Of a stretch of DNA of 36,192 bases, positions 1,552-36,192 are shown piece after piece. Each line of letters begins with the position of its first letter. Positions within the stretch are counted from its first letter, which is position 1. The DNA is from Dimorphilus gyrociliatus (lineage: Eukaryota > Animalia > Annelida), in assembly GCA_904063045.1 (NCBI GenBank), contig CAJFCJ010000123.1:1-36192 (forward strand). Reading direction: 5' to 3'. The position numbers were made by a program, and so were the translations under genes. Below the pieces are notes generated by a model, which saw only the letters and a program-made list of their open reading frames with translations, had not been told where the DNA came from and searched no databases.

Positions 1552-2438
1552 CTAACGGGACTTGTGATAATTGTCTAGCCGCATTTCAATATCTGCAATT
1601 CTTTAGAAAACAGAAAATGAAAGAGAGATATAAGTGGATAGTTGGCCATTTTTTTACAAAATTTTTGGCTATCTTGAACGTCGGGCAAGATGTGAATCAT
1701 GATTTTCAACTAGAGGTCATTTCTTTCATTTCAAAAAAAAATGACAACTATCCCATTGAATAAAAAGTTTCCAACATACCTCAGGGTTTTTTTTCTCATT
1801 TTAGATTCTTTTAAAAGTGTTAGAATTTCATTAATAGAATAAATGAATGGATTCAAAAACGGATTAAATGGTACAACAAGTATCATTGTAGTGATATAAA
1901 TATCATTCGTCAAATGAACGTTAGTAATAACGGAGAGAATAGCTAAAAAAATTTAAAATGAAAATAAATTGACAAATAAAACAAACATAAAAACAGACAT
2001 AAAATTGAAATTGGTGTCCAACATAAAATATTTGAAATTGCTATAATATAAGTACTCTTTGAAATAGATTTCTTTTGTTTAGTTACTTTTGCAAGAGTGG
2101 GTACTTTTTTTGATTTTGCCAAAGATACAAACATGATAATGTATAGGATAGATATTATACAACTGATGACGAAAGTTAATAAACCAAATGTTATGAAAGA
2201 AAACAGCCATCCTCTGCTTTTGTCACTTCGAATAAAAATATTGATGCATATTGTGGATTTTGAATAGAAAGTCTATAAGGAATAAATGAATGAATGAGGT
2301 CAGATAGCTGGATAGATAGAGAGATAGGTGAATTGATAGATAGATAAATAGATAGATAGATGGATGGACGGATAGATAGATAAATAAACAAAACATTTAC
2401 ATCTAACCTTATGTTGTATAATAGGAACCAATACCAAT
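1552..2438 (-). CDS. LGR exons for end of TM4, ECL2, TM5-TM7 and C-tail
   Basis: Exons 2438-2408, 2272-1999 and 1942-about 1780, plus a probable last exon ending at 1552. They give LVLVPIIQHK|TFYSKSTICINIFIRSDKSRGWLFSFITF...SNILCWTPISIL|SILSVITNVH...VPFNPFLNPFIYS, with the NPxxY motif present. Confidence 0.85.
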
Positions 2439-10199: not shown

Positions 10200-12665
10200 A
10201 TGAAATTATTCACCTTAATAATTATTCAAATCGCTTTTAGTTTTCATTTTGCTAAAGGTAAAATAAAAATTTTGTTGTTTCTGTTTTTATCTTATCTGTT
10301 TGTTTAACCATAGGTGATAATTGCCCTGATAACTGGATAAGATATCTTGATAGTTGTATTGGAATATTTTATAAGTCATCTTTTGATGTACAATCTACAT
10401 GCAATAGTAAAGGTGGAACTGCAATTATAATTGATTCTCCTAAGAAACTATCATTTGTTACAATATATCTTCACGAATGGGCAAAAAAAGAGTATTTTAT
10501 AGGCCTAAGTAGAATACGTACAACTGGAAATTATTCCAATGATTTTGTTTGGCATGATAATTCACCACTAAACTTTCATAATTTTAAATCAAATGCAAAT
10601 ACAGTGGTTAATGATAGAGATTATGTTAAGATTAATTCAAGAGATGGATTATGGAAAGCTGTTAAGAAAAACAGTGGATCTTCTGGATATATATGTGAGA
10701 TGACAAAAAGTTGGTATATACTCTATATAATATAGAATTTTACTTAAAATTAACTTTGAATTTAATCCCACCATATTTTTTCAACTATTAAGTTGACCCT
10801 ACTGGCTGCAAACCTTACTGGCATATGTTAAAGACCCGTCGCCCTCCTCATTTGGTTGATGGGATGACAAGTTCAAAACATCGTTGTCTAAAAGTATTTA
10901 GAAAAAAACATCTCAACAATCATTGTTATATTTTTAATCTCTTTCAACTAGGATTGCATCTCACAAAAATATGGTTTTTGCACAGGCATTTATTTTTATC
11001 ATTATGGAAATTATTGTTACTTGTTTGCTGATAAAAATTATGCAGAAGATGCAAAAGTTAGTAATAGTTACTTTGGATATTTCTATCAATGGGAATGCGA
11101 AGCTGACACTTGTAAAATGCAGAATGACATTATTGATAAACTTCCTGATCATAGTTTTAAAACTTCACTTGGTAGTACTTTAATGAGACCTTGGGAAGGC
11201 AGATATGGAAATTTTAGGCATAACAACTATGATGGAGCATTTATATTTAAACCTTCTAATAAACATCAATGGTTTCAAGTAGACCTCATAAATCTGTATA
11301 ACATTAGTGGTTATCACATTTTAGGAGGCGAAAGAACAAATGAAGCTACAGTTGAAGAACACTACTTTTTGTATAGTCTAAATTGTTTAGATTTTTCATG
11401 GTATCGCCAAAAACAGACACAGGACATTGTTGTAAGAGAAAAAAGCGTTTCTTTTGATCAACATAAAATAATTTTGGAAGTGTTTTTCTTTTTCAACAGA
11501 AAATGGTGAGAGACACTGAATGGGATTTCGACAGAGTTATCATTTTCAAATATCCTATCATTGCAAGATGTATACGTATAAATCCTCTCACTTGGAAAAA
11601 GTCAGCTGACTTGCGTTTAGCTATTCGTGGTTGCCAATTGGCTAAAGAAGTTACAAGTATTGGTATAAAATATCCTAGAAAGCATATCACGTGACATATT
11701 TTAACTATTTTTTTTATTAAAAGATTTCCAAGGAGTGCCATTGGGAATGGAATCTGGTTTGATAGATGATGTGCAACTGAGTGGAAGACGTGTAAGGACT
11801 GGTTCTAATAACTTTTATGCTCCTTTTTTGGCTAGGTTACGAGGTCGCGCCAAAGTGTTTCCTTTTCAACAGTCTTGTTTTGCAGTTTTGTCACAGTCAG
11901 ATTGGTTTGGTGTAACATGGTCATTACCTATTCAATTCTTTGGATTAAGTTTATCTCCAATTATCAATAATGGAGGTTTTATACGAAGGTTCCAGTTGGC
12001 AGTTGGATATAATTACAAGACACTAACTAAAAAATTAAGAAACGTTTCCGGTAATTTGATAAGATTTACTGCTTCAGTTGAACAAGTTTCATTAACTCCA
12101 ATTCAAACCCTTTTGGATAAGCCAATAAGAGCAAAACATGTTCGTGTTTATCCAGATGAATATACTACTGCTGGATGTACTGTATTTGAATTTTATGGAA
12201 AATTAGACGGTAATTATTTAATTAATTAATTAAATAAAAAATAATGAATTGTAATTTTTCTCTAGCTGTTTGTCCTAAATTGAATTTTGAAAAAAATACT
12301 ATTTTAACAACCACGACTTGTCCAATTACACAAAATATTACCACAATTTATGATGAATCAGCAAATATAACGCATCAAAGAGTCGAATCTATCAATTTCA
12401 TTGAATTTCAATTACTCTATCATATTGTTGCATTTGAAATTCAATTTTCAAATATACCTCTTCCTGAATGGAACATTGAATGGGCAAGAGACAACAACAT
12501 TTGGAGGTCATTAGATCAATATAGAGTTGACAATGTTGACAATTTCACAATAAATATTACTTTATTAAATCTTCATTCAGCAACAAAATTACGTTTAACC
12601 TTTTGGAGTTTGAATACCAGTTTTGTTTTACCTTGTGTAGAAGTTTCTATTAGCGCATGTCAAAG
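10200..12665 (+). CDS. PKD1L ectodomain unit 1: signal peptide, C-type lectin, PAN, F5/8C x3 (third degenerate)
   Basis: CPDNWIRYLDSC...FIGL...FVWHDNSPL...YICE (exon 10314-10709, absent from the ORF track); CLKDCISQKYGFCTGIYF...CYLF; QWFQVDL...RCIRINP...LRLAIRGC; PLGMESGLIDD...CTVFEFYG. Confidence 0.8.
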
Positions 12666-15600
12666 TGAAGTTTGTCCACCAAACACAATAGAATATGATA
12701 ATTCTTGCTATCAATTCATTCCTGGCTATAGTGGTGGAGGCGATAAAAGTATTATAAAAGAGATTTGTAAAGATATGGTTTGGACTGATTACTCATATCC
12801 AATTGAAATTTCTAATGTTGAAGAGGATTCGCTTGCTTTCTATATGGCAAGGAGGTTTGTACCTATTGTCTCCTTCTCTCTTACTTTTAACTCTTTTTTA
12901 ACAGATTTGGTAGCTTCTGGATTGGATTGACTGTAAATATGTCTGCTCCCGAAAATATTTTAATGAAACAACTAAATTCAAGTATGAATTGGCAATGGGC
13001 CAATAATGCCCCAATTGATTTCACAAGTTTTGGTCTGAATGAACCTGGTACTAATTTACATCATTGTGTAACTCAAGAAGTAAATTTACGTACCTGGCAT
13101 TCCAAGGATTGTAATGATTTTTATTTCTATTTGTGCGAAATGAAGGCAAACAGTTTGTAGAACAAAAATATAAAATACCATAAAAAATGACAAGCAGCTA
13201 ATTATACGATTTATTTAGAAAAGAAAAATGACAAAAATATCAAGTGGCTCCACCTAAATGAAGGTAGATTTAATAATGCATTTTTAAAGGAGACATTAGA
13301 AACTAATCAGATTGAAAGTTGCTCTTATTGGTGTGAACATGAAAGTAGTTTTGAATGTAAAGGATTTGCATTTGAGTTTGGGTCTGATACTCGAAAGTGT
13401 CTTTTGTACAATGACACTACAAGTATTGAACCACTTTCTGATAGTTCATTTGATGCCTTTGAAAAGTACACTATGGTAAATGACTGTGAAGAAGCTCTAA
13501 TAGATGGTCCTAATGGGATTCCGGATAGTGGTATTGAAACTGATGTAACCACAACAAATCCAATATATGGAAAACATAGCTTAAGAATGGATTTTCGCAA
13601 TCTCTATAGTTCATCACATCCAACAAATGGAGGATATTTCCATGCAGACAATCTCAATTTTTACATCAAATTGAACTTTGGAAGAGTAGTTAAAATGAGA
13701 AGAATAAAGCTTGAAGCAAGTGGAAGGCATTATCCTTACATGGTGTACTATTTCTATTTAGACATCAGCAACAGTTCAGATACAGTAGTGCCTGTCACAC
13801 ACAAAAATGAAATACGTCAGGTAAACAGTTTTCGTGTATGGTTATAGGATTTTGTTGAATTCACTTTTCATTTTAGAAATTTTTTGGAAATTTTCATAGA
13901 ATGTCACTTGCCCATAATTCATTCCATACACCTTTAATTGGTCAGTATCTTAAATTTACTCCAGAATCAGGTTCAACAAAAGCTGGAATTCGATTAGAAG
14001 TTTATGGATGTAATGTGAATGTTACTAAGAATTATATTAAACCCCTCGGTTTGGAAAATCTGTATATATTACATTCTCAAATGATGAGTGAAAGTACGCA
14101 GGAGATTGACAATGGCATTCATGAAATTCGATTAGGTTGTAAATCCTATTTACTATCAGATGGACATTATCTCGCAGACACATATTTCCAATTTGACCTT
14201 GGCTTACGATATGAGATAATAAAAACTGTAATAGAAGGTTCATGTTCATCTAATCAATACATCAAAAGTTTCAGTGTTATGTACTCTGACAATCTTTTGA
14301 ATTGGTCTACTGATACAACAAAAAGTGGTCAGACCAGAGTGTACAATGCCCAATACTTAAACACTGCTACAGAAGTTATATTTAAACAACCAATAGTCGG
14401 TCGTTATGTTCGATTTACAAGCATTGCCTACTTTACTGCACCACATATTAATATGGAATTGTATGGCTATCCAACAAAGCACCCTCAATTGAATATTACA
14501 GATAAATTTCCCAAAATGGTTAGTGCCTCCTCTCAGAATGATTCAATAAATGCACCAAAGATGGCGTTATATACTAAAGATACCTTTTGGTGTAAACAAC
14601 AAAGTGAATTAGACACCTGGTGGTCAGCTGATCTAGGTTTAATCTACTATATTGAGAGATTATTTATTTACTACAAAGACAATGATTTAAGAGATGCCTG
14701 TGAAAATATTTTGGTATTTGGGTCACAGTATAATGCAACAAATATGATCAAAGTGGACAAAGTAAGAATGATATATACAGTCCTCATATGAAGTCTCTGG
14801 CAGGGTTGTTCTTAGATTGGAAAAAGTGAATTAATTAACTAACAGGACTTGCATAATTAAATCTTTTTGTTTGGAATGAAGGATAAGATATTTATACAGC
14901 TGAATTTATAGATAAAACTTGTTAAAAAATTTTTCCTACTTTATAGTAATCTTCATTTAAAAATTTTGAACAAAATGAAGGAGAGTAAGCTGCTGCCATG
15001 CCAAAAAACTGAAAAAATTTACAAAAACCTAACCCATCTTGTTGAAAAGTGTTTCGCCTTGTGTATGTAGGCAATAGCTGGCTTTTTAATATGTTAATGT
15101 ATTGCTCTGAATCCATTGATTCTTTAAATAATGCCAGAGCTCTGGAGCCATCAAATTTTATTGCTGCCCATATCATTATTTTACAGTTTTTTTCTTTCAA
15201 ACTTTTTCTTGAATATTTTGGAAGATGTTTATCTTCTTTTCTACATCTAACTCTAATCCTTTATCATGGATATAATCAAATGTTGGCTCATCTTCAGCTG
15301 TTTCTATAATTTTTTTAGCAAAGGCAATTCTTTTCTTTTGGTTTCCTGGTTTGCCACATAGCTTTTCAGACCTCATTTAAGAAGGATCTTCTGCCAAGAA
15401 GATAGACTTACTTTGCCTGCCATGCTCCATTCATTGAACATTTGTCTTGCAGAATAGAAAGGGTTTTTCTTGTATAATTACAAGATTCCTTTCATCTGAT
15501 TCAGCTATTGTTTTGGGACAACCAGTTCTAGGTTTGTCTTCCATGGAAGAACATTCCATTGCCTTCTTCAGGTTGTACTGTACTGTACAATAGGCAATTT

Positions 15601-18600
15601 GAAGCTGCTTTGATATCTTTACTTGCTTTGCCCTCTTTTACTTAAGTCAACAATCATCTCCCTCATTTCAAGGCTTATCTTCACCATTATATAATGTTCT
15701 TTAAATTTTCTGTTCTGTGACTGTGTAACACTTCTGAGTAAATGTCATAAAAAATTGTAATTGGTTTTCTGTCAGATTATTATCTATTTTTTTCGTAGGA
15801 ACAGGAAACATGGCAGGAACTTACTCTCCTTTATTTTGTTCAAAATTTTTAAGTAAAGATTACTGTAGAGTTAGAAAATTTGTTTAGCAAGTTTTATCTA
15901 TAAATTCAGTTGTATAAATATCTTATCCTTCATTCTAAACAAAAAGATTAATTAAGCAAGCCCTGTTTGTCAAATAATTCACTTTTTCCAATCTAAGAAC
16001 AACCCTGGCAGAGACTTCTTATCAGGACTGTATTACCAATATGAAAACTGGTATTAATATATTTAAACTTTTTTATAATTTATTTTAAGGAAATAACTTG
16101 TGACTTTGAAGCAAATCATACAGGACTTGCTGCATCACCAGCTTTGCGCTTTAGATTTATTCGTCTAGAGTTTAAAAATGGACCAAACGAATGCATCAGA
16201 TTTGAATTATATGGTGAAAAAGCACCAATATGTCCTCCAGGTTCGGTCAGGCATATGGACAAGTGCTATATGATTTCTGAGACACCAGGTAATTTTGAAA
16301 AAGCAGTACAATTTTGTCAATCAGGATTTAGTTGGAAAGGTCCAAGTTATCTGGTGATGCCAAAAAATACACTTGAAACTGATTTTGTTGCAAGATTTTA
16401 CCAATTTAGGTAAGCAGAACTGGAAAACCAAATATATTATGTTCAAAATAGTGCATTAAAATAAGTAATCTTTAATTTAATGTATTTAGAGATAGGAATA
16501 TTGCTATTTACATTGGTGCTAAGCAAACAACAACTCTGAGTAAATATGTTTGGTTAGATGGAACACCAGTAACAAACTATTTAAAATTTCATCCAAGTTA
16601 CTCTCCACATTTATCCTATCCATGCGTTTTAATGAAAAATTTTGTCTCCAAAAGCTCATGTGATGATAATGCCTATGCAATGTGTGAGACAGGGGCAAAT
16701 TGTTAGTATTTCATTAAAAGTGCATTTGTGAAAAGTGCAATTTTCTCCACAAAAACTGTTTTTCAATTCTTTATTAATACGAATTGACAAACATTATTTT
16801 CAGAATGTCTTTTTGATAAGAAAAAAGATATTCTTCCATAAAGAATGCAATCAATAAATTACGTATTAGACAGTTTTTGAAACAACATCTATCTATTGAT
16901 TATATGCACTTTTTTAAAACGTCAAATTCTGTAGATTCATGCATTCAAGGAAAAGCACACAAATGTAATATCTCTTCTTAATTTCAACAGTACCAGATGA
17001 ATTAAATGATTACAATGAGGAAGAAAAATGTCAAGTTGTATGGTCCTTGAGACCATCATATCGATTACATGATCAGTATAAAGTGGAATCTATTACAACA
17101 ATCAATATAGCAAGCTGCTTAAACTACTGTCTCTCTCATAAGTTGTGCAAATCAGTCAGTTGGCTATTCACGTATGTAAATTACGAGCTGAATGCTATAT
17201 TATTTACTAATTAGCATATTCATATCTTAACATCCATTTGCAGACTGCGCACTAGAACGGAATGCATTATTTACAATTCAAATAGTTCAATGCTGAAATA
17301 TGATCAAGACAAATATATCAAATCAGGGTCATATCATTATTATGAGTATTTTTGCTTTGATAGAAAGAGTTACAAACTATTACCAGAAGGAAATTATGAA
17401 GAAGACAGAGACTTTAATGTTACAGTGCTGTACGATAAACTTGCCTATCCTAGCATAGATAAGATATATCATCTTGGTTATATTACTGCTTCGCAGAGTG
17501 GTGTCAGGTGTGCCAAAAGCATTTATTGCTTTTTACAAGTGGATTTTCAAAGATTAGTTCTATTGACTTCCTTTACTACATCTTCACATTTGACCTCTGC
17601 ATATTATACAACTAGAGCTCATGTTTTCTATAGCAGATCTTCATACGATCACTGGCTGCCAATAAGAGATAGGGATGGAGATTTTATTGTAAGATATTGA
17701 ATGATTTAACCAAGATTTTGTGCTAATTCAACTAAAAGAAGCCGCATTTCTGTTTACTGATTGAAGAAACAAAATGGCGACTTTTAGATAAACTAGCACC
17801 AAATTTTCTAGATAGATCTGATGTTTTGACATATTTCATTTTTGCATTTCATGTTCCATGAATATAGGAGTACTTTATACAAGATGATACAAGCTATTAT
17901 AATAATCATGAATTACCTCCTGATATTGTTTGTAAAGCATTTAGAATCAATCCCACAGCCTATAACAACTATGCAATTCTTAATATTCAATTATATGGAA
18001 GATATATTGAAGAAGGTCAGAGGTCAATTCATACTCCTCAATGCCATCATCCTTTGGGCTTAGAGAGGCTAGATCAAATACATGCTTCTCAAATAACTGC
18101 CCTATCTTCTTTGGATAATTATCCTTCTATTGATGTTAGATTAAATAGTCCCACCTGTTGGGCAACTGGTTCTGACAATTACATACAAATAGATTTAGGT
18201 CATGTCTACTATGTTACTGGTTTTATTCCGCAAAGGTGCAAAAATCAAGCCTATTATATTTATGAATTTAGAGTTGAATATTCATTATATAGAATTCATG
18301 GATGGAAATTTTATGATGAGGTAAATAAAAATGATAAGGAACAATCTTCACAACAATGACTAATACAAACACTTGATCCATCTCCATAGAAACTGACCTT
18401 AAGAAAAAATCCATATTGGATTACAGAAATGAAGAATTTATTACTTTTCAACGAAACTCTTGAGTTAAGATTTATGAGATTTTCAGCCAAGAACTTTGTA
18501 GGGAAGAGAGGCATACGTTTAGAAATTATTGGTTGCATAAGACGTAAGCAAACAACAATTTCATTTACATGTATTTTTTGACAAGAAAGTTGTTTTTGAT

Positions 18601-21097: not shown

Positions 21098-21136
<39 letters not shown>

Positions 21137-27100: not shown

Positions 27101-30100
27101 TAACAATAGTAGGCAACTGCTTTAATCAAGTTTCAGCGATTAATTCAACAAAAGAACTCTCTTTACACGAAGAAATTAGACATCTCTCAATCACAGCTGT
27201 AAATGATCATCTTGTCAGTTTTCAATGGTATCTCCTAACTTTTATGATAAAATCTGGGACTAATATGAATCTATCAATATCTTTTGGTGATGGCAATATG
27301 ATAAATTTCCAAAGCAAAGGTCCAGGGTTAACATATGCGCATAATTATACGTACAGTGATGAAGGAATTTATAAAGTAGTGATAACTGCTGAGAATGTTG
27401 TCAATAACGAAACGTATTCCTATCCTAATGGATTTTTCGTTCAAAACAGAATTGAAAATGCTTCATTTGCCTTGGAATATATGTTGCCAAATAATATTTC
27501 TTTATTTATAAGACAGCATCTGCCATTTGTTAGGCCTACAAATGTATTTTGTGTAGCAGAATTTGAAAATTCAACAATTCACCTAAAAGACGCTTCTCAA
27601 CAATATGGTAATGTTATTAAAAACGTTAATCTGCTTACTGGATTAGTTGTTAAACACCAATACCCGAGAATTTTTCATAAGAGAGAATTTAGAAATTTAA
27701 CCGTTCAAGCTCTGTGCTTCAATGGAGTCTCTAATGCATCATTTTCACAAAATATCTCACTTGAAGAAGAAATTTCAGGACTAAATGTGTCAATTGATAA
27801 ACACGTTTTACCAACTTTTGAAAAACTGAAACTTAATATTTCAACTCTTACTGGAACAAATATCAACTTGACAGTTGACTTTGGAGATGGCAAACTATCT
27901 AGTTTCATTTTCAAAGGTCCAAGTATGGAATATCTGCTGACTTATACATACACAGAACAAAATATATTTCGATTGAGTACAAGAATATTTAACTCAGTTA
28001 ATTCTCTTATAAAACAGTACGAAATTACAGTTCAAAATGGAATTATCAATGCCACATTCTCTTTATTTTATCAAGAGCCTAGAACAATATTTTTGAAAGT
28101 TAAACAGAATAAGCCACTAATCTTACCTACAAATGTTACATGCTCAATTGATGTTGGTAAAGAAAATCAAACAATTCTTAAACATCAAAATCTATTATTG
28201 GGAAGTGAAGTAAATTACACTTTAAATCAGATTTACAACAAAAGGGAATTGAAGCTTTTAAACATCACAAAGAGATGCTATAATTTAGTTTCTAGCGTCG
28301 AATTTTACGATAATGTTACCTTCAGAGAAGAGATCAGGGGACTAGACTTTCAAGTTGACACTAAACTTGTAAAAGTTAATGAAACTGTAAATTTTACTGT
28401 TCAAACAACAACTGGTGATAATATTTCACTTGAACTGGACTATGGAGACGGAAATACTCTTAGGAAATCAATCAAAAGTATATATGAACTAAAAAGCTTC
28501 ACGTACGACTACTTCAAATCAGGGAATTACAGCACAAGTGTTGTAGTGAAAAACAGTGTCAATCTGTTGTCGAAAACCATACCATCCAAGATAATAGTTC
28601 AAATGCCAATTACTGATTTTATTGTTCACGCACACTCCGTTGGAAGTCTAGACCGACAGCCATTAAACTTTTCCATTTCTGTGAACAAACATAAACCATT
28701 TCCAACAGATGTTTTCTGTTACTTTCAACTAACAAATGAAAATGTAAATCATAAATTTATATATCAACCTGATTTGAGCTCAAATTTGAAATCACTTACT
28801 CTAAGTCACAAATATGTAAGAGATGATGTTGGCAAACGCATGTTTGTTAATATATCCTGTAAAAATTTAGTTAGTAATTTTGAAAAGACTCTTAATTTGA
28901 GTATATATGAAAAAGTTACAGGTTTGTCACTCAAAGTAGACAAACTTGCTTATAGAGAAATGGAAAATGTCCGTTTGGAGATAACAGTTGTGGAGGGATC
29001 ATCGGTTATTTATAGCATTTACCATTTATCATCAATTGTAAGAAAACACCATCCACTTTTATTTGCCAGTGACGAATCATATATCAAGAGTTTGCAATTT
29101 GCAAAGATTGGAAATTATTCTGTAAAAGTAGTTGGAGAAAATGAAGTAAACAGAGAAGAAAAAACAATTAAAGTAATTATACAGAACAAGATTGAAAATA
29201 TTAGCTTAGAAGCAAATAGATCAATACTATGGACTCCTGGAATTATTACTTTTGAACTTGTCTCAGATCCTCTTCAAGGTTTTCTTAGAGATGTCTATTG
29301 CAGGTTTAATTTTAGTAATGGTGTGTCTAAAAGCAAATTTGTATCATCTTGGCCGCCATCTACTTCTTTATTCTATGATTTTTACTTTCCAAGGAGTGCA
29401 ATTGGGAATCTAACAACAAATCTAGTTTGTAGTAATTTGCTGTCTACTAAGAAACTGGATGTACGGACAGAAGTTATACTTGACGCAGTAATGGTAAAAC
29501 AGATACAAGACAATGGAACTGTCTTTTTAACTAATAAAACAACAATAACAACTGAAATCAAGAGAATGGGTACAAATTCATGTTTTATCTTTGATCTTGA
29601 TGATAGACACGCAACAAAATTAGCATTTGGTATTAATGATATTTGTAAGGATTACGCTGCTGATAGATCTATAGAATTTACACTAATCCCCGTTGAACAA
29701 CAATTCATAGTATTCAATCACATTTATGATGAGATAGCATACTACAATGTCAAGGTTCACGCATTCAATCATATTACGGAAGATGTGAAAACTGTTCAAA
29801 CAAGAGTCATTGATTGGTATTGCTATAGCCCAAATGCATCAGTACCAATTCAATATACCTTTGAAGAAAACCCACTTCAAATTATGAAGAGCACTGCATT
29901 CGAAGTACCTGTAAATATTAGTTGGGATTGTATGAAAACAAGTGAAATTGTTTACAAATGGACAGTTTTTAAATTCAATACTAATTCCCTAAAGTTTCAA
30001 TCAATTAATAAAACTTTAAATATTAAAGAGCGGCAGTTAGATTATGGAAAATACAGAGTTGAATATTTTATTTATATGCTAAATAACATGGATGCTAATA

Positions 30101-33100
30101 ATACTTATGAATATTTCTTTGAGATTACACCAACTCCATTATATGCTGAAATTCAAAATGGAAATTGGACTAGTGCTGACTATGATACAAATAAAACTTT
30201 TAATGCCAAAATATTCAGTTTTGACCCTGATCAAAATATTAACGAAAAGCTGAAGGCTATAAATTTCAAATGGCATTGCAGGGGAGAAAATGAAAATTTG
30301 GATTTATCAGTAAATAATGAATTCAAAGGACCAAAACTACTCGATATCCTTACACTGAATCAATTTAAAAAAAATGGAGGATGCTTTGGAAATGGTCCTG
30401 GGTATATTGACAATAATGACAATGGTTCGAATGGAATATTAACAATTAATACCTTCTATATGATACCAAATGCAACGTATATTATAACTTTAAAGATTTT
30501 ATCAACTACAACAAATAGAGAGGCAACTTTTCAACAGAAATTATTTTTAAATTCCCCAACAAAGCCAACATTTAAACTAAAGTACAAACATTCTTTTCAT
30601 ATAAGTATTCTATTATCATTTTTGTTTGTGTTTTAGGTGTAAAAAGAATTGTTTTAGGAAAACGTCTCTTTCATCGACCACAATTTTTGAAGCTACTTGT
30701 ACATCGAAGTGTACAAGTTTGTATTGGAAAATTGTTTATGATTGGAAAGTTTTGGAAAAGGCTAATGAAACTTGGAATTCTGTCAAAGATCTGTCTGATA
30801 AAATCATTGGAAATATTACAACAAACATAGTAGAAATAAAAGGAAATGTTCTCAACCCTGGAACTTATCATACTATTGTTGCTGAAGGAAAATTGGAAGA
30901 AATTGGTGAGACTGGATATATAAATGAGACATTTCTTGTAAATAAACCACCATTTGGTGGTAAATGTAATTGTCAGCCAAGGACTGGTTTTGCCTCAATC
31001 ACTAGATTTGAGATAAGTTGTCACGGTTGGCAAGAGTTTGAAAAGTCACCAGACACACCTGGTTTAAAATATCAGTACAGAGCAAAACCTCGGGGGAAAA
31101 AGACTAGTTTCTTACTATACTTTTCTTTTAAGGATGAAGCCGTCTTCTTAATGTTGCCTGTTGGTGACCCAAGAAATCAAATTACTGAAACAATAGTCAA
31201 TGTAATTGACTCTGTGGACGATTCATTTGAATTTCTATTCGATGTACATGTGAAACCTCCTCCAGAGCCTGAAAATGTATTGTTGGATTCAGCCATAAAT
31301 GTCGTTTCAAATGGTCTTTTGGATAAACAGTTGGAAACTGGTAATTTTAGTGAAGTGTCTTCTACTATATATTCAGTAACGTCAATTCTCAATGCGAATC
31401 TTGATGCGTCTGTAGAAAATGTAAGGAATATGACGAAAACAGAAGAAGCTAAAGATGCTTGTGAAAAGAGATTGAAAAGAATCAAGGTGAGGCAGATGAA
31501 GTTTTAAAGTTACTTTTTGTTTTATATTGTTGAATTCTTTGAAAGGCAAGAAAACAAATGATTGCTTTTGCAATAAAAATTCCATCTAAATCAATTGATG
31601 AATTGGAACAAAACAATGGTCTTATTAGCACTCTAGTATACAAACCAAAGGAAGTAGATATTGAATCACAGGTTGCTCGCTGTCATTATGTAACTAGAAT
31701 TTTAAACGAAAAATTCCTTTTTAAATCTTGTAGATAAAGGTAGCTAATCAAATAGGAAAGTTAAATAATGTGTTGAACGAAGAAAACGTTTCACCAACAC
31801 TTAAAAGAGATTTGTCAATAAGTATGAAAATATTCATTTTAGGGAGACTACAATATTTAATCAAAAAACTTTCTTTTAAAAATAGGCCTGTTAGAAACAT
31901 CTATTCTAACAACTACAGCAGCTGATACTTATAATGAAGATGTTAAAGAGAAAGAGCAATTTAAAGTTGTCAATCAAACGGCTAATGCAACAAACTATTT
32001 CTGCGATGTTACCTCTCACACTAAGCATGTAACAAAAAGTGATGAAAATAGCACAGATGTCCCAACAAGTGCTACTGGTAACAAACTCAAAAATGTTATG
32101 ACAAGTGTTCTTGAAGTTATTAACAATGTTACTGATGAATTACTACTTGAGCAAAAGGAAGATGCACCGTCTTTAAATGTTGAGTTTGAAGAAATGAGTA
32201 TCAATATTGAAAAAGCATCTCTTGATAAAGTCAAAAATAGTAGTTATAGTTCAAATTTTGGTTCAATAAAATTGAATGACTTTGAAGGTCACAGTAAAAA
32301 TGGTTCATGTATAACTAGAAAATTAATCATGTCCAATATTAATCCATATATGTGGGATAAGTCTTCTTTAGATGTTACATCAACAATTACAGAATTTTCA
32401 ATTCAGCCTTGTGATCATTTATTACCAACAAAACAAACCAGAAGGAGAAGAAGTATTCAGGAAAAGCAAACATCGGCTAACTTTTCTCTGATTTTGAACA
32501 TGAAGAACACTAAGGAAGGTATCCAATACATAAACACAACAAAAAAATCAGCTATTCATATTTTCAATGCCACAAGAAATATTTTGATACTCACTTTCAA
32601 TTTTAAAACTGAGGATGTTATCTCAGTATTCGTTGGCTATAACTTGAGACCAGCTAATGATTTGAATAACGAATCTTTTATTCTACCTGATGTAAATAAG
32701 ACATGCTCACCAATTCTTGGTCCAGAACATTGTGAAGAATACCAAAGAACAATTATGCTCAGACCTGATACAAATCATACGATTATGGCTGTTGTTGAAT
32801 GTTTCAATTGCTCAAATCAGATTCTCAACTACAGTGTAAGAATAGCTTATCCATCGTGTAAAATGTGGAAGGAGAACAAGTGGCAAGAGGACAATAATGC
32901 TTGCACAATCGACAGAGAGACAACAACATCCAAAGCAAGGTTTACAAGTAATCTATTTGCAAGTTTAGGAGCTGGATTAGATATGGCACCAAATCTTATC
33001 AATTTTGAAACAGTATTTGATGATTTTGCAAGTAAATTAGCAGATAATGCAGCCGTCTTTGGAACAATTTGCTCATTAATTATCCTTTTCATTCCGTTTG

Positions 33101-36032
33101 CATTATTAGTCAGAAGATTAGACAAAAGGGATAAATTACTGTGGACACCACTACCATTACTAGATAACTATAAGGAAGATAAATATGAATACGAAATACA
33201 TGTCTACACAGGAAATAAGAAAGATGGTGGCACTCAGTCCAAAGTTAAGTTAACATGTTATGGAAGTGAAGGGAGTACAGTTGATCGAACATTAGCTTCA
33301 GAGAGTGTAGTTTCCTTTGCAGCTGGATCCACTAGATCATTCATTATGGCAACATCTAAGAGTATTGGATCAATTGTTTGCATAAAAGTATCTCTTGAAC
33401 CAACAAATTTCCAGTCAAAAGAATATGATCCGTGGTTTTTAACAAGAATCATAATTATCGATAAAGTTGCTGAAAATTCTTGGTTTAGTTTTGATTGTAA
33501 CCAATGGCTATCATCTACACATGCAGATTTTCAAACGGAAAGAGTACTTGTTGCAACGAAATCAGAGATGGATTCACAATCTATTAAAGATATTAAAACA
33601 AAATTGATGGATGACCATTTATGGGTGTCTGTTGGAGCAAGAAGAACAAAATCAATATTCACAAGACTTCAAAGATTATCGGTTTGCTTTGTTGCTCTCT
33701 TTCTATCAATGATTGCAAGTTGTATGTTCTATAGAAATTCTGGAGAATCTGATGTTAAAGTTGGGTTGACATTCGGGACAGTTACATTTACAGTATATGA
33801 ATTATATGTGGGTTTAGCAAGTAGTGTTGTGGTGTTCCCTGGATTGGTTCTCATAACATTGTTGTTCAATTCAAAAAGATGGCGGAAGTATACAATCCCA
33901 ATAGGATGGGCTATAACATTTCTTACAGCAGCAACAGCAGCATTCTTTACAATTCTATATTCAATTCAATGGGGAAGAGAAAAATCATTAAAATGGTTAA
34001 TGTCATTTTTTCTGTCTTTCATACAAAGTATTATTCTTGTTCAACCAGTCAAAGTAATACTGGTTGCACTCTTGATAACATTTTTGTTTAGAAAAGATTC
34101 TAATCTTACCAAAGTTGAAGAAAATATTAAAGATTTGAAAAGATTAAGAATGAAAAATCTATCTCACATTCCTTTAGGTAAGAGAATTCTGTTAAACATG
34201 AATACTTTACATATTTCAGAATACCTAATCATTTGAACAGAATTGAACATTTATGAAAGATTGAACAAAACACTGGACAATACTCGTACTCTAAAAAATG
34301 AAAAAGTTTTAAAAGATAAGATGCACTATATGATAAAGAATATTCTTCTACATGCAATATATCTAATATTTGTTCTCTTTATATGCTACAGTAATCAGAA
34401 TCCAATGGTTTACTATCAAAATAAATCAATTTTCAATACAATACCAAATGTTAGTAGGGTGAATAATTATGAAAATTTTGGAAATGGATTGAAACTCATG
34501 CCATACCAGAAATTTATCCTACAACTCATTATAATAATAAAAATCTATCAAACTATGATCTTAAACACACAAGTGAAATGAATCATATGAGATTTTCAAG
34601 CTGTTAGATTATTTCAACTAAGAGTCAAAAGTGACAATTGCCAAATTCCTACTGGTATGGATTTAAAACAATACTTTTCAAATCGTAGCTGTTTTGGATA
34701 TTACTCAATGTCTAGTAAGCTTAATAGGAACTTTTCTGTTTTTTGGGATGATTTCAATTTTAATAGAACTCATAATGCTTTCATGTATTCGGAAAAACAT
34801 AAGGGTTATTCAATTTCATTGAGCCAAACAGCTGATAATGCAATGGAAATAGTAGATGAGCTGAAAAGGTATGGTTGGCTAGATCGTCAAACACGCTATG
34901 TCATATTAGATTTAACAATAATGAATCAAGAAATTGTCTCTCAGGTATCTTGGAAATTTGAATTCAAACCATTTGGAGGAATTATTGCAAATATTCATTG
35001 TGATTCTTTACAGCTTTATAGATATACTGGAGTTGGTGGTTTAGTGTCTCTTATATTTGAAGTTATATCTATATTAATTTGGCTCGTCTTAGTTACAATA
35101 TGCTTTTATTCTTTTATTAAGCATTCAAAAGTCCCTGGTGTACTTTTACTCGTCTCATTGGTATGTTTTCTTTGCGCCGCTCTTCTTTATATTTGGAGAA
35201 CAATAATTGGAGTAAAAGCTGTGGAAACTGTTATGAATTCCAGAAATGAATATACGGATTTATCCATATTTTTTAATGTGCACAGCTGCTTTATGATGTT
35301 TATTGCATTCTGTGGTTTCTTTGGTGAGCTGTATGTGTTGAGTTTATTAAAAATATCTAGAACAATTTCAGTTCTAGTGAGCACATTGAGAAAATCAGGC
35401 AAAGATTTAGCATTGATAGGACTGTGTAGCTGTATTATTCTTATTGGCTATGCTTGCTGGGGTTACATGATTCTCGGGAGAAATATAAATAACTATAAAA
35501 GTTTTAAATCTGCGTGTTATGCATTAATTGCAACAATTTTTGGTCATTTGGATTTTCATATATTGTCTGACGGTGCAGGATCTATGGGCAAAATCTACAT
35601 AATTTCATATGGATCTGTAATGACGTATTTAATTTTAAATGTTTTTATTACAACTTTAAATGAATTTTTAAATGCAATCAAAATTGATCCAACTGTTTTA
35701 CCAGAAGATCATCAAGTGTTTCAATATATTACTAAGAGTTTAATGAAATTATTCTTAAAGGATGATGACAAAGTAAAAACATCACATAAAGAATTTGATG
35801 ATACGACATTTAGAGGTTGCCCTTTTCATTTGTTCTTTAATGTGTATTACTTTATTTTCTTTTTGTAGCATTGTACAGTAGAATTGAAGATTTGGAGAAA
35901 ATTGCTTGCTCATGGGATTCTCCTGCAGATTTGGAATTATTTGATATAGTATTGACTACTGCAACAAATCAAGTAAATGAAATAGATTATAAAAATAGAG
36001 ATAATCCTCGAAACAGCAAACTGGACAATTAA
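10200..36032 (+). CDS. Giant polycystin-1-like (PKD1L/REJ family) receptor-channel subunit, about 33 exons, about 6,500 aa estimated; two frameshifts near 34476 and 34595
   Basis: Signal peptide MKLFTLIIIQIAFSFHFAKG at 10200. A continuous reading frame was reconstructed through about 32 GT-AG introns, covering lectin/discoidin modules, PKD repeats, REJ, GPS, TM1, PLAT, polycystin TM region and stop TAA 36030-36032. Confidence 0.88.
12666..16222 (+). CDS. PKD1L ectodomain unit 2: C-type lectin, PAN, F5/8C x3 (third split by the Tc1-containing intron)
   Basis: CPPNTIEYDNSCY...FWIGL...WQWAN...YLCE; CSYWCEHESSFECKGFAF...CLLYN; GIRLEVYGC; PLGLEN...MELYG; WWSADLG...RFIRLEF...CIRFELYG. Confidence 0.82.
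14778..16030 (-). mobile_element. Tc1-like DNA transposon with about 220-bp TIRs, internally deleted transposase, in PKD1L intron 14762-16089
   Basis: TA|CAGTCC...GGACTG|TA ends; TIRs about 14778-15000 and 15809-16030. Minus-strand ORF from ATG 15687 has an HTH region with RTGCP and IMIWAAI...YINIL...FQQD, truncated after the second Asp. Confidence 0.93.
16223..19075 (+). CDS. PKD1L ectodomain unit 3: C-type lectin, PAN, F5/8C x3
   Basis: CPPGSVRHMDKCY...YIGA...VWLDGT...AMCE; SCLNYCLSHKLCKSVSL; LQVDFQR...FRINP...IQLYG; PLGLE...YIQIDLG...GIRLEIIGC; ITLNFKRIFTITGF...YSIDSAQW. Confidence 0.8.
19124..21620 (+). CDS. PKD1L ectodomain unit 4 (partial): C-type lectin, PAN, one F5/8C
   Basis: CPPGYFLFNTKC...RLGL...FTWQDG...WINVEC...IACE; SCLMACNEEIRFLCISFFF...CILYS; LQPWVLFYF...ILQG...FAMQIELYGC. 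Interrupted by mariner intron 19930-21153. Confidence 0.82.
19969..21096 (-). mobile_element. Mariner-family (DD34D-type) element, deleted and inactive, in PKD1L intron 19930-21153
   Basis: TA-flanked TIRs TTAGGGTCA(G/C)CCTGAAAG(T/C)TTTAC. Transposase remnants KLMACVFWDREG and HPADSPDLPPSDYYLF; the middle of the N-terminal half is missing. Confidence 0.93.
20650..20856 (+). mobile_element. About 207-bp MITE with telomere-like CCCTAA repeats nested in mariner
   Basis: Perfect 21-bp inverted repeat CGACAGAAAACGTCCACAAAT at 20655-20675 / 20831-20851; internal ccctaaccctaaccc; collinear with the copy at 24319. Confidence 0.85.
21102..21133. repeat. (TA)n microsatellite next to the mariner right end
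   Basis: About 15 TA units directly visible. Confidence 0.95.
21625..22200 (+). CDS. Fibrinogen C-terminal (FReD)-like domain within PKD1L
   Basis: GDWTVLGQK...SWSDFKNGF...FWAGN...Y.ARIDI...KFFTIDSDN...C...GWW...C..SNLLG follows the FBG consensus (WTV.Q.R, W..YK.GFG, FWLGN, GGWW, C..SNLNG). Confidence 0.85.
22268..22766 (+). CDS. F-type lectin (fucolectin/FTP) domain within PKD1L
   Basis: NIAVGK.A.Q...LAIDG...C...NPWWVVNL...ITNRKDCC...L.NF.V...LCEV matches the FTLD consensus. Confidence 0.88.
22831..22992 (+). CDS. Six-cysteine EB/EGF-like module exon within PKD1L
   Basis: YGDSCESDSNCIDPYTLC...SCQCGSYTVLKNNNC, a single exon flanked by phase-1 introns. Confidence 0.6.
23110..25990 (+). CDS. 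Three Cys-containing CARDB-like beta-sandwich repeats (third after the mariner intron 23995-25573)
   Basis: Each about 140 aa, with N.N.....N(F/Y)...(I/V).(F/L)S/T-D in the middle and C....(Y/F).C...(D/N)...C near the end. The family assignment is tentative. Confidence 0.45.
24015..25515 (+). mobile_element. Near full-length degenerate mariner element (DD34D) in PKD1L intron 23995-25573
   Basis: TA-flanked TIRs TT(A/G)GGT...ATCGAAAAGTTT. Motifs WIPYDL (WVPHEL-like), VTGDESWVH, QRDNARPHT and HPP*SADLAPSDFYLF, with stops and frameshifts. About 1284 bp after removing the nested MITE and one TSD copy. Confidence 0.95.
24319..24526 (+). mobile_element. 208-bp MITE with a 9-bp target-site duplication (Mutator- or Merlin-like), nested in mariner
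   Basis: GTAAGAAAA directly repeated at 24310-24318 and 24527-24535; TIR GGATACGACAGAAAACGGCCCCAA / TTGGGGCCGTTTTCTGTTGATCCC. Removing it restores the transposase frame SEDSVRKWAIK. Confidence 0.92.
26030..29812 (+). CDS. Array of about 13 PKD-type Ig-like repeats inside the 5-kb exon 25574-30581
   Basis: Recurrent ITFGDG, ISFGDG, VDFGDG and LDYGDG motifs followed by H/Y-x-Y...G-x-Y-x-V...N, alternating with PT(N/D)V-x-C...C-x-N-x-VS repeats. Confidence 0.9.
29813..31486 (+). CDS. REJ module of PKD1L
   Basis: CYSPN...YKWTV...LDYGKY...SFDPD...FKWHC...C.KNC...VNKPPFGGKCNCQP..G....T.F.I.C.GW...Y.Y...LP.GD, typical of REJ; intron 30582-30636. Confidence 0.88.
32098..33125 (+). CDS. GAIN/GPS region and first TM helix of PKD1L
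   Basis: SCKMWKENKW...ACTI...TSNLFASLGAGLDMAPNLINF, followed by NAAVFGTICSLIILFIPFALLVRRLDKRD. Confidence 0.85.
33175..33555 (+). CDS. PLAT/LH2 domain of PKD1L
   Basis: YEYEIHVYTG...GGTQSKVKL...YG..G...F..GS...F...IG.I..I.V...PWFL..I.I.D...F.CNQWLS. Confidence 0.92.
33600..35780 (+). CDS. Polycystin transmembrane region, TOP domain and TRPP-like channel module
   Basis: HLWVSV...FTRLQRLSVCF; WG..KS.KWL.SF..S...S....QP.K; VRLFQLRVK..C; L....WLDRQTR.V; S5-pore-S6 with YKSFKSA...IFGHLDF...LNVFITTLNE. Two frameshifts lie at about 34476 and 34595. Confidence 0.9.
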
Positions 36033-36192
36033 TGAGTATATTTGAAAATTCAAAGGATAACAAATCAAAATGTTTAGATTTCTAAATGTATTGCAATTTG
36101 TTGCATTTGATGAAAAAGGATTTATCAATATATATAATAGAATACATTATTTCAAACATGACGTTATTTGTACTGTTACAAAACCAACACAC

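What the first reader, a model, noticed from the sequence alone, without database searches (positions are those of the whole stretch)
10200..36032. About 6,500-aa polycystin-1-like protein with a five-family lectin/recognition mega-ectodomain
Seen: one open frame, apart from the TOP frameshifts, linking 4 C-type lectin, 4 PAN, about 10 F5/8C discoidin, 1 fibrinogen-C, 1 F-type lectin, 1 EB and 3 CARDB-like domains to PKD x13, REJ, GAIN/GPS, PLAT and the channel module. Established: human PKD1 has one CTL, and sea-urchin REJ proteins have one or two CTLs. Inference: an exon-shuffled glycan/pattern sensor coupled directly to a TRPP-type channel, possibly for gamete recognition, settlement cues or innate immunity. 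I do not recall this combination being described, but cannot verify that.
Basis: partly seen in the sequence, partly recalled or inferred. Interest (0 to 1): 0.75.

Follow-up and report, generated by a model that had tools for sequence, protein, structure and literature searches.

The report
Giant lectin-fold polycystin-1-like receptor gene
This contig of the tiny marine worm Dimorphilus gyrociliatus carries one 32-exon gene for a roughly 6,490-residue polycystin-1-type membrane protein whose outer half is a chain of about 20 lectin-type modules; it is one more copy of a worm-specific gene family that this scan has met before, and nobody has tested what it binds.

Summary
Window 10200-36032 (+) is one gene: ATG at 10200, stop at 36030-36032, 32 exons, about 6,487 codons. 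It is collinear end to end with four annotated Dimorphilus gyrociliatus paralogues of 5,543-6,071 aa.

- **Outer half:** four CTLD-PAN-(F5/8C)n cassettes, then fibrinogen-C, an F-type-lectin-like domain and a weak EB-like stretch.
- **Middle:** about 440 aa of unidentified modules, then 8 canonical plus 5 interleaved PKD modules, then REJ.
- **Membrane part:** PLAT, 11 TM, TOP domain and a PKD2-like channel half.

The three long gaps are introns swollen by transposons, not gene boundaries.

They are absent from contig C44, whose end overlaps the last 5.9 kb of this contig at 99.75%.

- The GPS cleavage motif is lost in the whole worm clade.
- All four CTLDs and the F-type domain lack canonical sugar-binding residues, so "glycan sensor" is unsupported.
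- EB is weak; the CARDB call is unconfirmed.

The architecture is public only as unnamed predictions of paralogues. I found no paper describing it and no protein model for this copy. The scan already found this family on other contigs. Expression could not be tested.

The parts
10200..36032 (+). Whole gene: 32 exons, 31 introns, about 6,487 codons plus stop
   Evidence: Splice-aware model, refined. Collinear with P0001, P0151, P0152 and P0003.
10200..10257 (+). Exon 1: start codon and hydrophobic signal-peptide-like stretch, followed by a 56-nt phase-1 intron
   Evidence: Sequence read; model. 'Signal peptide' is my reading of the sequence; no predictor was run.
10355..12193 (+). Cassette 1: CTLD1 (10355-10708), weak PAN (10870-11065), two F5/8C domains (11213-11625, 11852-12193)
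   Evidence: Pfam Lectin_C E 8e-10 and F5_F8_type_C; own profiles.
12209..12723 (+). About 150-aa module of unknown family
   Evidence: No Pfam match beyond a weak C-lectin-like tail.
12736..16209 (+). Cassette 2: CTLD2 (12736-13148), PAN (13263-13472), three F5/8C domains (13611-14002, 14174-14461, 14573-16209 across intron 10)
   Evidence: Pfam; own profiles.
14762..16089 (+). Intron 10 (1,328 nt), filled by a non-autonomous element with inverted ends of about 210 nt; 105 matches genome-wide
   Evidence: 14775-15000 matches the reverse of 15809-16033 at 90%, and 105 matches in the genome.
16285..19047 (+). Cassette 3: CTLD3 (16285-16691), weak PAN (17092-17304, split by the 72-nt intron 17172-17243 that holds an in-frame TAG), three F5/8C domains (17485-17993, 18141-18527, 18718-19047)
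   Evidence: Pfam; own profiles; intron placed by cysteine spacing against P0152.
19384..22985 (+). Cassette 4 and tail: CTLD4 (19384-19581), PAN (19695-19922), F5/8C (21258-21599), fibrinogen-C (21699-22106), F-type-lectin-like domain (22360-22588 and on), weak EB-like cysteine module (22842-22985)
   Evidence: Pfam: Lectin_C 1e-6, PAN_1 3e-7, F5_F8_type_C 2e-12, Fibrinogen_C 3e-14, F5_F8_type_C_2 1e-5; EB 0.013.
19964..21101 (-). Degenerate mariner-type transposon inside intron 21 (19930-21153)
   Evidence: 29-nt inverted ends, 90% complementary. Transposase_1 E 1.6e-10 on the minus strand, 20051-20671. In the C7 paralogue the same stretch is about 1.2 kb shorter.
23110..23994 (+).
   Evidence: No Pfam match. 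Atlas CARDB look-alikes at 0.83-0.89 only. AlphaFold pLDDT 39. Conserved at 53-55% in four paralogues.
24011..25533 (+). Second degenerate mariner-type transposon inside intron 26 (23995-25573), starting 16 nt after the donor CAG|GTAAAC
   Evidence: Inverted ends; weak Transposase_1 match; the paralogues end the exon at the same place.
25574..30581 (+). Exon 27 (5,008 nt). PKD array at 26020-29790 (8 canonical plus 5 interleaved PKD-like modules), then the start of REJ
   Evidence: Pfam PKD E 3e-37; own profile; interleaved modules aligned; hhalign 81%.
30632..31363 (+). REJ domain, Pfam-matched part
   Evidence: PF02010 E 9.6e-27, profile positions 208-448.
32857..33054 (+). Degenerate GPS-like stretch. 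The C..W..W..C half is kept; the CxC and H-L/T cleavage site are replaced (reads N-L-F/A)
   Evidence: Alignment with GPS-positive homologues; no Pfam GPS match.
33055..34086 (+). TM1 (33055-33111), PLAT (33190-33552), TM2-TM5 (33676-34086)
   Evidence: PLAT E 2.8e-17; polycystin-1 chain 6a70_B E 2e-24; hydropathy.
34241..35815 (+). Exon 31: TM6 (34330-34386), TOP/polycystin domain, TM7-TM11 (35050-35649) with pore loop. Broken in this contig by 1-nt indels at 34475 and 34598
   Evidence: Indels found. The C44 copy is one 543-aa ORF with Polycystin_dom 3-199/199. PKD2 structures E 1e-24. Paralogue ORFs here are 534-557 aa against 425 in the window.
35869..36032 (+). Last exon and stop codon
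   Evidence: Model.
30246..36192 (.). Stretch that dovetails with the end of contig C44 (239898-245842, reverse) at 99.75%: 11 substitutions and 4 homopolymer indels

Best explanation
**What it is (shown)**
- A single, essentially intact gene of the annelid Dimorphilus gyrociliatus.
- It encodes a polycystin-1-family (PKD1-like, non-PC1 branch) 11-TM receptor/channel subunit of about 6,490 residues.
- It belongs to a clade of giant paralogues seen, among the sequences compared, only in this worm.
- The outer 3,100 residues are four tandem CTLD-PAN-(F5/8C)2-3 cassettes, then fibrinogen-C, an F-type-lectin-like domain and cysteine-rich modules.
- Next come about 440 aa of unknown beta modules, 13 PKD-type Ig modules, REJ and a degenerate GPS.
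- The membrane part is TM1-PLAT-TM2-5, then a TOP domain and a PKD2-like six-helix pore half.

**How it most likely works (inferred)**
- It probably assembles 1:3 with one of the two TRPP2-type genes of this genome (contigs C9 and C14), as PC1-PKD2 and PKD1L3-PKD2L1 do.
- It would then report what the long ectodomain binds or is pulled by.
- The GPS cleavage site is lost, so the ectodomain should stay covalently joined to the channel body. Signalling by shedding or a tethered agonist is therefore unlikely.
- The CTLDs and the F-type domain lack canonical sugar-binding residues. Ligands may be proteins, matrix or particles as readily as glycans.

**The gaps and frameshifts**
- The three long gaps are transposon-swollen introns (shown).
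- The two TOP frameshifts are most likely homopolymer assembly errors or, less likely, a broken allele (inferred).
For: - **Organism and paralogues:** named (DgyrCDS14777, 14890, 6354, 14438).
- **One gene:** a stop-free 32-exon model with GT-AG introns. It is collinear with all four annotated paralogues over the whole length.
- **Transposons are intronic:** in paralogues, the exons on either side of the mariner elements end at the same places. In the C7 paralogue the stretch spanning the first mariner is about 1.2 kb shorter.
- **Domains:** Pfam and own profiles.
- **PKD1-family body:** 6a70_B polycystin-1 E 2e-24, PKD2 structures E 1e-24, 11 hydrophobic helices.
- **Frameshifts:** absent from the overlapping C44 copy, which gives one 543-aa ORF with a complete TOP domain. 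Every paralogue has a 534-557-aa ORF there.
- **Species-specific clade:** support 100 in the tree.
- **Possible partners:** two strong PKD_channel loci, 276 and 216 bits.
- **GPS loss:**. **Missing sugar-binding motifs:**
Against:
- No protein model of this locus appeared in the length ranges searched: 192-610 aa and 1,449-9,700 aa.
- As written, the window sequence has two frameshifts and a premature stop in the TOP domain.
- The 11 substitutions against C44 (4 synonymous, 7 non-synonymous) show that the two contigs are different alleles or very recent copies. The indels could therefore be real.
- Three transposon insertions in one gene are unusual in a genome whose median intron is 66 bp (PMC7854359).
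- Some exon borders are model choices (introns 9, 11, 20, 29 and 32).
- Heteromer formation, ligand and cell type are all inference.
Confidence: 0.8

Rival explanations
1. This copy, or the allele on this contig, is a young pseudogene. It was inactivated by the two TOP-domain frameshifts and is accumulating transposons, while the intact function is carried by paralogues or by the C44 allele.
For: - Frameshifts at 34475 and 34598 give a stop at 34579 in the window sequence.
- Three transposon insertions.
- No protein model or transcript fragment was found for the locus.
- 7 of the 11 differences from C44 are non-synonymous.
- At least one clearly dead paralogue exists (C55, 8 stops).
Against: - About 19.3 kb of coding sequence is otherwise free of stops and frameshifts, including a 5,008-nt exon in 30%-GC DNA.
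- All modelled splice sites are GT-AG and all three transposons lie in introns.
- Both indels sit in A/T runs. C44 itself has the opposite kind of error near its own end: a 1-nt loss at 30497 in an exon that is open in the window.
Confidence: 0.15
2. There are two or three neighbouring genes: a secreted lectin mosaic at 10.2-24 kb and a separate PKD1-like gene from 25.6 kb. They were read as one only because they are adjacent.
For: - Gaps of 1.2-1.6 kb at 19.9-21.2 kb and 24.0-25.6 kb.
- A shorter family member without lectin domains exists (DgyrCDS13672, 2,634 aa) and nests among the giants.
Against: - Both gaps are transposons flanked by good donor and acceptor sites in matching phase.
- Without the elements the introns would be about 85 and 56 nt.
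- Exon 27 has no start codon plus signal peptide of its own at its 5' end.
- Four annotated paralogues span both halves in single models.
Confidence: 0.05
3. A functional rival. The ectodomain is not a ligand sensor but a structural tether or adhesion stalk, for example anchoring cilia or cuticle to a mechanosensitive channel. The lectin folds would serve as rigid spacers or matrix anchors.
For: - Canonical sugar-binding residues are missing in all CTLDs and in the F-type domain.
- With the GPS cleavage site lost there is an uncleaved, continuous chain to the membrane.
- In the annelid Platynereis, PKD1-1 and PKD2-1 mediate hydrodynamic mechanosensation (PMC6294549).
- Another PKD1-like protein carries 18 LDLa plus 12 Fz modules instead, so the chassis tolerates any long array.
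Against: - The family has diversified to 30-60% identity in the ectodomain across ten or more loci. That pattern fits recognition of varied targets better than a uniform tether.
- F5/8C, fibrinogen-C and PAN domains are binding modules in other proteins (general knowledge).
Confidence: 0.35

Closest known systems
Annotated D. gyrociliatus paralogues DgyrCDS14890 (5,744 aa), DgyrCDS14777 (5,543 aa), DgyrCDS6354 (6,065 aa) and DgyrCDS14438 (6,071 aa)
   Same: Same domain order from N-terminus to C-terminus: 10 F5/8C-type domains each, then fibrinogen-C, PKD array, REJ, PLAT and channel. All share the same degenerate GPS. They form one clade with the window gene.
   Different: - Only 30-51% identical over the long ectodomain alignments and 43-55% in the C-terminal part.
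- The window copy has four CTLDs by my profile against 2-3 in the others.
- It has three transposon-bearing introns and lies on an unmerged 36-kb contig.
- No public protein model for it was found.
Human/vertebrate polycystin-1 (PKD1, PC1)
   Same: PKD repeats, REJ, TM1-PLAT-TM2-5, TOP domain and a six-helix channel-like half. It has a CTLD in the ectodomain. 6a70_B matches at E 2e-24.
   Different: - PC1 has one CTLD plus LRR and WSC (Pfam lists) and a cleavable H-L/T GPS.
- Here there are about 20 lectin-fold modules and no LRR or WSC match.
- The GPS cleavage site is lost.
- The gene falls outside the vertebrate PC1 clade.
- The pore half resembles PKD2 far more closely than it resembles PKD1L3, and no PC1 match to that half passed E 0.001.
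Sea-urchin REJ proteins / PKDREJ / PKD1L2-type invertebrate PKD1-like proteins
   Same: REJ + PLAT + 11-TM body with a mosaic ectodomain that can include lectin-type modules. Examples are Petromyzon PKD1L2 and an Actinia protein with F5/8C. They sit in the same broad non-PC1 part of the tree.
   Different: - Those proteins are 2,000-3,900 aa with zero to a few recognition modules and keep C-x-C-x-H-L-T/S.
- Sequence identity is only about 30%.
Unnamed 4,406-aa PKD1-like protein P0010, with 18 LDLa and 12 Fz domains
   Same: Same design principle: a very long array of extracellular binding modules grafted onto REJ-GPS-PLAT-TOP-channel.
   Different: The module families are different (LDLa and Fz, no lectin folds), the GPS is intact, and it sits on a different branch.
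Platynereis dumerilii PKD1-1 / PKD2-1
   Same: Annelid PKD1-family and TRPP pair with a demonstrated sensory role in hydrodynamic startle (PMC6294549).
   Different: No lectin array is reported in that paper: 'lectin' occurs 0 times.

Membership tests
Polycystin-1 (PKD1/REJ) family | REJ domain | tested here: met
   PF02010 E 9.6e-27 on 30605-31504.
Polycystin-1 (PKD1/REJ) family | PLAT domain in the loop after the first membrane helix | tested here: met
   PF01477 E 2.8e-17 at 33190-33552, between TM1 and TM2. 6a70_B polycystin-1 E 2e-24.
Polycystin-1 (PKD1/REJ) family | Eleven membrane helices, the last six forming a TRP-like channel half with a TOP/polycystin domain after the first of the six | tested here: met
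   Eleven hydropathy peaks. Polycystin_dom 3-199/199 and PKD_channel on the C44 copy. PKD2 structures E 1e-24. Topology is by hydropathy only.
Polycystin-1 (PKD1/REJ) family | GAIN/GPS domain with the C-x-C-x-H-L-T/S autoproteolysis site before TM1 | tested here: inconclusive
   - No Pfam GPS match.
- The C..W..W..C half is present, but the CxC and H-L/T are replaced by F-T-S-N-L-F/A in all D. gyrociliatus members.
- The GAIN fold attempt failed: pLDDT 53, no Foldseek match.
- The domain position is kept; cleavage competence is very unlikely.
Polycystin-1 (PKD1/REJ) family | Tandem PKD (Ig-like) repeats upstream of REJ | tested here: met
   PF00801 E 2.9e-37. 8 canonical plus 5 interleaved modules.
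TRPP pore-forming subunit (PKD2-like) | Pore helix, L-G-D selectivity filter and a conserved S6 | tested here: inconclusive
   The alignment to PKD2 runs through S1-S6. PKD2's 'ILGDINF' aligns with 'IFGHLDF', and the S6 'LNMFLAIIND' aligns with 'LNVFITTLNE'. The residues differ at the filter, and conduction cannot be tested here.
Ca-dependent C-type lectins (sugar-binding CTLDs) | EPN or QPD tripeptide plus WND motif in the long-loop region | tested here: not met
   None of the four CTLD sequences printed has them (for example 'NEPG...WHSKDC' and 'WINVEC'). The fold-level match is present (Lectin_C). The motif definition is from my own knowledge.
F-type (fucose-binding) lectins | His plus two Arg fucose-binding triad around the N-R-x-D-C-C motif | tested here: not met
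   The sequence reads 'GYCAIGE...NPWWVVNL...ITNRKDCCAAEL'. The first Arg is kept, the His and the second Arg are not. The fold-level match is PF22633 E 1.3e-5. The triad is recalled from memory of the eel agglutinin.
F5/8 type C (discoidin) domains | Match to PF00754 | tested here: met
   Five pieces match with E from 1.5e-20 to 2.7e-5; three score above the curated cut-off and two below it. A sixth fragment matched only at E 0.052. The own profile finds 10 copies, as in each paralogue.
Fibrinogen C-terminal domain | Match to PF00147 | tested here: met
   E 3.3e-14, 53.7 bits against a cut-off of 22.
PAN/apple domains | Match to PF00024 | tested here: met
   Two clear matches (E 7e-5 and 3e-7, above the cut-off) and one weak (E 0.008). 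The own profile adds a fourth weak copy after CTLD1.
CARDB domains | Match to PF07705 or a CARDB-like fold | tested here: inconclusive
   No Pfam match. Atlas look-alikes are all under 0.9. The AlphaFold model is unusable.
EB module | Match to PF01683 | tested here: inconclusive
   E 0.013, 16 bits against a cut-off of 24.3.

The most novel reading that the evidence does not exclude
The ten or more giant paralogues form a fast-diversifying, dinophilid-specific receptor repertoire. In it, arrays of lectin-fold modules, re-tooled for non-canonical ligands, are wired without GPS cleavage directly to a TRPP-type pore. That would be a new class of ionotropic pattern or chemical receptors in ciliated sensory or immune cells, analogous in logic to variable immune-type receptors but with a channel output.
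Probability: 0.12. Interest if true: 0.8.

Novelty: new variant of a known kind. Interest (0 to 1): 0.42.

Why it matters
- Polycystin-1 proteins are important (kidney disease, fertilisation, left-right patterning), but their ligands and the job of their large ectodomains remain unclear.
- A compact genome that has multiplied a PKD1-type channel subunit, and loaded each copy with about 20 recognition-type modules, offers natural variants for asking what the ectodomain does.
- These variants lack GPS cleavage, which bears on whether cleavage and a tethered agonist are needed for signalling.
- For this particular window the practical value is smaller. It adds an apparently unmodelled family member, shows that contigs C123 and C44 should be joined, and flags homopolymer errors or a broken allele in the TOP domain.

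Tried and rejected
**Searches and folds that led nowhere**
I did not try it another way.
Transcript or contig context was therefore not obtainable.
- Looking for this locus's own protein model: nothing in 3,049-9,700 aa, 192-610 aa or 1,449-4,609 aa. Models of 610-1,449 aa were not covered.
- AlphaFold of exon 26 with four paralogue rows: pLDDT 39, unusable.
- AlphaFold of the pre-TM1 region: pLDDT 53, and Foldseek against the PDB gave nothing below E 0.08. The GAIN fold is therefore unverified.
- Pfam at E up to 5 on the GPS stretch, the unknown 150-aa module, the start of exon 27 and one interleaved module: nothing useful.

**Model choices I corrected or rejected**
- My first model hid the TOP frameshifts behind a false 138-nt intron (34454-34591). 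It also placed a 39-nt intron over the TAG at 17212. Both were corrected after comparison with C44 and with paralogue cysteine spacing.
- Homology-only refinement of splice sites favoured deleting unconserved residues. I did not follow it where the splice signals were weak.

**Literature**
- The genome paper and its supplements do not mention polycystins or lectins.
- One full-text search for the domain combination found no description of it.

- The joined spliced protein was used only inside my own scripts. It was not sent to any search or folding tool, so all database work was done exon by exon.
Full report
**What the DNA is.** The window is AT-rich (about 30% GC). On the plus strand, from about 10.2 kb to the end, it shows a chain of open pieces that change frame every few hundred bases. 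The junctions have short GT...AG introns. Protein searches name the organism as the miniature annelid Dimorphilus gyrociliatus. Its genome paper reports a median intron of 66 bp and DNA transposons of the Mariner and MULE types (PMC7854359). The window is the whole of contig C123, 36,192 bp.

**Observation check: domains.** Pfam on single open pieces confirms the following:
- Lectin_C at 10262-10732, 12891-13157, 16476-16703 and 19306-19596.
- PAN_1 at 13191-13844 and 19575-19934, and weakly at 16969-17211.
- F5_F8_type_C in five pieces, plus a sixth fragment at only E 0.052.
- Fibrinogen_C at E 3e-14, the NedA-like/F-type model PF22633, and a weak EB match.
- PKD, REJ, PLAT, Polycystin_dom and PKD_channel.

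**Observation check: counts.** Many domains are split by introns, so I built profiles from the gene and four paralogues inside a script.
- These give 4 CTLDs.
- They give 10 F5/8C-type domains, and exactly 10 in every paralogue.
- They give 2 strong and 2 weak PAN domains.
- They give 8 canonical PKD domains spaced about 195 aa apart.
- The five roughly 110-aa modules between the PKD domains align with each other. They relate to the PKD profile at 81% probability, E 1e-5.
- Each CTLD is followed by a PAN and then by two or three F5/8C domains. The ectodomain is thus a four-fold CTLD-PAN-(F5/8C)n cassette, with the last cassette running on into fibrinogen-C, the F-type-like domain and a cysteine-rich stretch.
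- 'CARDB-like x3' is unverified. Exon 26 and the start of exon 27 have no Pfam match. There are only weak Atlas look-alikes, and the fold attempt failed.

**One gene or several.** A splice-aware dynamic-programming model was trained on the long exons and anchored by tblastn hits of the paralogues. It runs from the ATG at 10200 to the stop at 36030-36032 without any in-frame stop. After corrections it has 32 exons and 6,487 codons.
- The model is collinear with DgyrCDS6354 from residue 18 to 6,418, and likewise with DgyrCDS14438, 14777 and 14890.
- The three long introns each hold a repeat. Intron 10 holds a long-inverted-end element with 105 matches in the genome. Intron 21 holds a 1.1-kb degenerate mariner with 29-nt inverted ends and a Transposase_1 match on the minus strand. 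Intron 26 holds a 1.5-kb degenerate mariner that starts 16 nt after a strong CAG|GTAAAC donor.
- In the paralogues, the exons flanking the two mariner sites end at the same residues. In the C7 paralogue the stretch spanning the first mariner is about 1.2 kb shorter.
- Exon 27 has no start and signal peptide of its own.
- The two-gene reading is therefore unlikely.

**The 'TOP frameshifts' and the assembly.** The last 5.9 kb of the contig (30246-36192) dovetails with the end of contig C44 in reverse orientation at 99.75% identity. C123 is therefore the continuation of C44, not a redundant copy. The lectin half occurs nowhere else at high identity.
- The two contigs differ by 11 substitutions, of which 4 are synonymous and 7 non-synonymous, and by four 1-nt indels in A/T runs.
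- Two indels, a missing T at 34475 and an extra A at 34598, bracket 41 codons of the TOP domain. In the window these codons are readable only in another frame.
- C44 gives one 543-aa open frame with a complete Polycystin_dom (profile positions 3-199 of 199). All paralogues have 534-557-aa frames there, against 425 in the window.
- Conversely, C44 has lost a T at 30497 inside an exon that is open in the window.
- I read the indels as homopolymer assembly errors near contig ends (about 75%). The alternative is a broken allele.
- My first model had hidden the frameshifts behind a false intron. This is corrected in the final model.

**Family membership.**
- The body is PKD1-type. REJ matches at E 1e-26. 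TM1-PLAT-TM2-5 matches polycystin-1 chain 6a70_B at E 2e-24.
- TOP plus six helices matches PKD2 structures at E 1e-24. PKD1L3 matches only weakly and PC1 not at all.
- There are eleven hydropathy peaks.
- In a quick maximum-likelihood tree of the membrane part, all D. gyrociliatus members form one clade (support 100). The clade includes two shorter ones without lectin domains. It lies outside vertebrate PC1, and the window is nearest DgyrCDS14890 and 14777. This was the quick tree; the careful search did not finish.
- The genome holds at least ten loci with both halves, several on small contigs, and one clearly dead copy on C55.

**Differences that bear on mechanism.**
- Homologues with a Pfam GPS match read C-x-C-x-H-L-T/S-S-F before TM1. 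Every D. gyrociliatus member reads F-T/K-S-N-L-F/L-A/G-S-L at that position. Both cysteines, the histidine and the nucleophile are gone, so autoproteolysis is very unlikely and the ectodomain should stay attached.
- The four CTLDs lack EPN/QPD and WND. The F-type domain keeps N-R-x-D-C-C but not the histidine or the second arginine. The motif definitions come from my own knowledge.
- At the pore, PKD2's L-G-D aligns with F-G-H, while S6 is well conserved.
- Two loci with very strong PKD_channel matches (C9 and C14) are candidate TRPP2-type partners.
- From these points I infer an uncleaved receptor subunit of a TRPP heteromer. Its antenna binds, or is pulled by, something that need not be a sugar.

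**How new.**
- An exhaustive profile search with the PLAT/TM piece found 2,729 relatives. Among the best 150, only the D. gyrociliatus proteins exceed 4,500 aa.
- Word-based searches with Pfam lists show the lectin mosaic only in four D. gyrociliatus predictions, all unnamed.
- An Actinia protein and a lamprey PKD1L2 carry single F5/8C matches. One unnamed 4,406-aa relative carries 18 LDLa and 12 Fz domains. Long arrays on this chassis are therefore a wider theme.
- A 449-aa Logan fragment with PAN, F5/8C and fibrinogen-C is at most 57% identical to any locus of this assembly. It therefore comes from elsewhere, and I could not trace it.
- The genome paper, its supplements, and one full-text search for the combination gave no description.
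- This scan has already reported the family on other contigs of this genome (s1-080216, s1-080458, s1-080363). The present window adds one more member, apparently without a public protein model in the ranges I could search.

**Limits.**
- There is no expression evidence for this copy.
- Several exon borders are model choices.
Database work was done exon by exon.
- Function is inferred.

Noticed in passing
window 30246-36192 and G000 contig C44:239898-245842: C123 and C44 overlap end to end (5.9 kb, 99.75%) and were not merged. The gene therefore straddles an assembly break. Each contig carries homopolymer indels that the other lacks.
   Followed up: yes
window 14762-16089: An element of about 1.25 kb with roughly 210-nt inverted ends and no recognisable coding capacity, with 105 matches across the genome. 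It is probably a non-autonomous DNA transposon family.
   Followed up: partly
window 2191-4768, minus strand: A neighbouring gene on the other strand has LDL-receptor class A repeats (4451-4768, E 7e-16) and leucine-rich repeats (2191-3801). A 140-base N run at 2439-2578 lies inside it. The gene was not identified further.
   Followed up: partly
G000 contigs C9:453388-454062 and C14:321338-322095: Two loci with much stronger PKD_channel matches (276 and 216 bits) than any of the PKD1-like genes. They are probably the TRPP2-type partners.
   Followed up: no
G000 C7:2953164-3008741: Three giant paralogues lie in tandem at about 20-kb spacing on C7. Others sit on small contigs (C136, C183, C75, C95, C43, C49), which suggests the family lies in regions that are hard to assemble.
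   Followed up: partly
DgyrCDS13672 (P0004, 2,634 aa): A family member without any lectin-type Pfam domain nests inside the clade of giants in the tree. The lectin half was therefore either lost in it, or its model is truncated.
   Followed up: no
P0166 (Logan-derived, 449 aa): A PAN + F5/8C + fibrinogen-C protein that is only 50-57% identical to every locus of this assembly. The same cassette therefore exists in another, unidentified source.
   Followed up: partly
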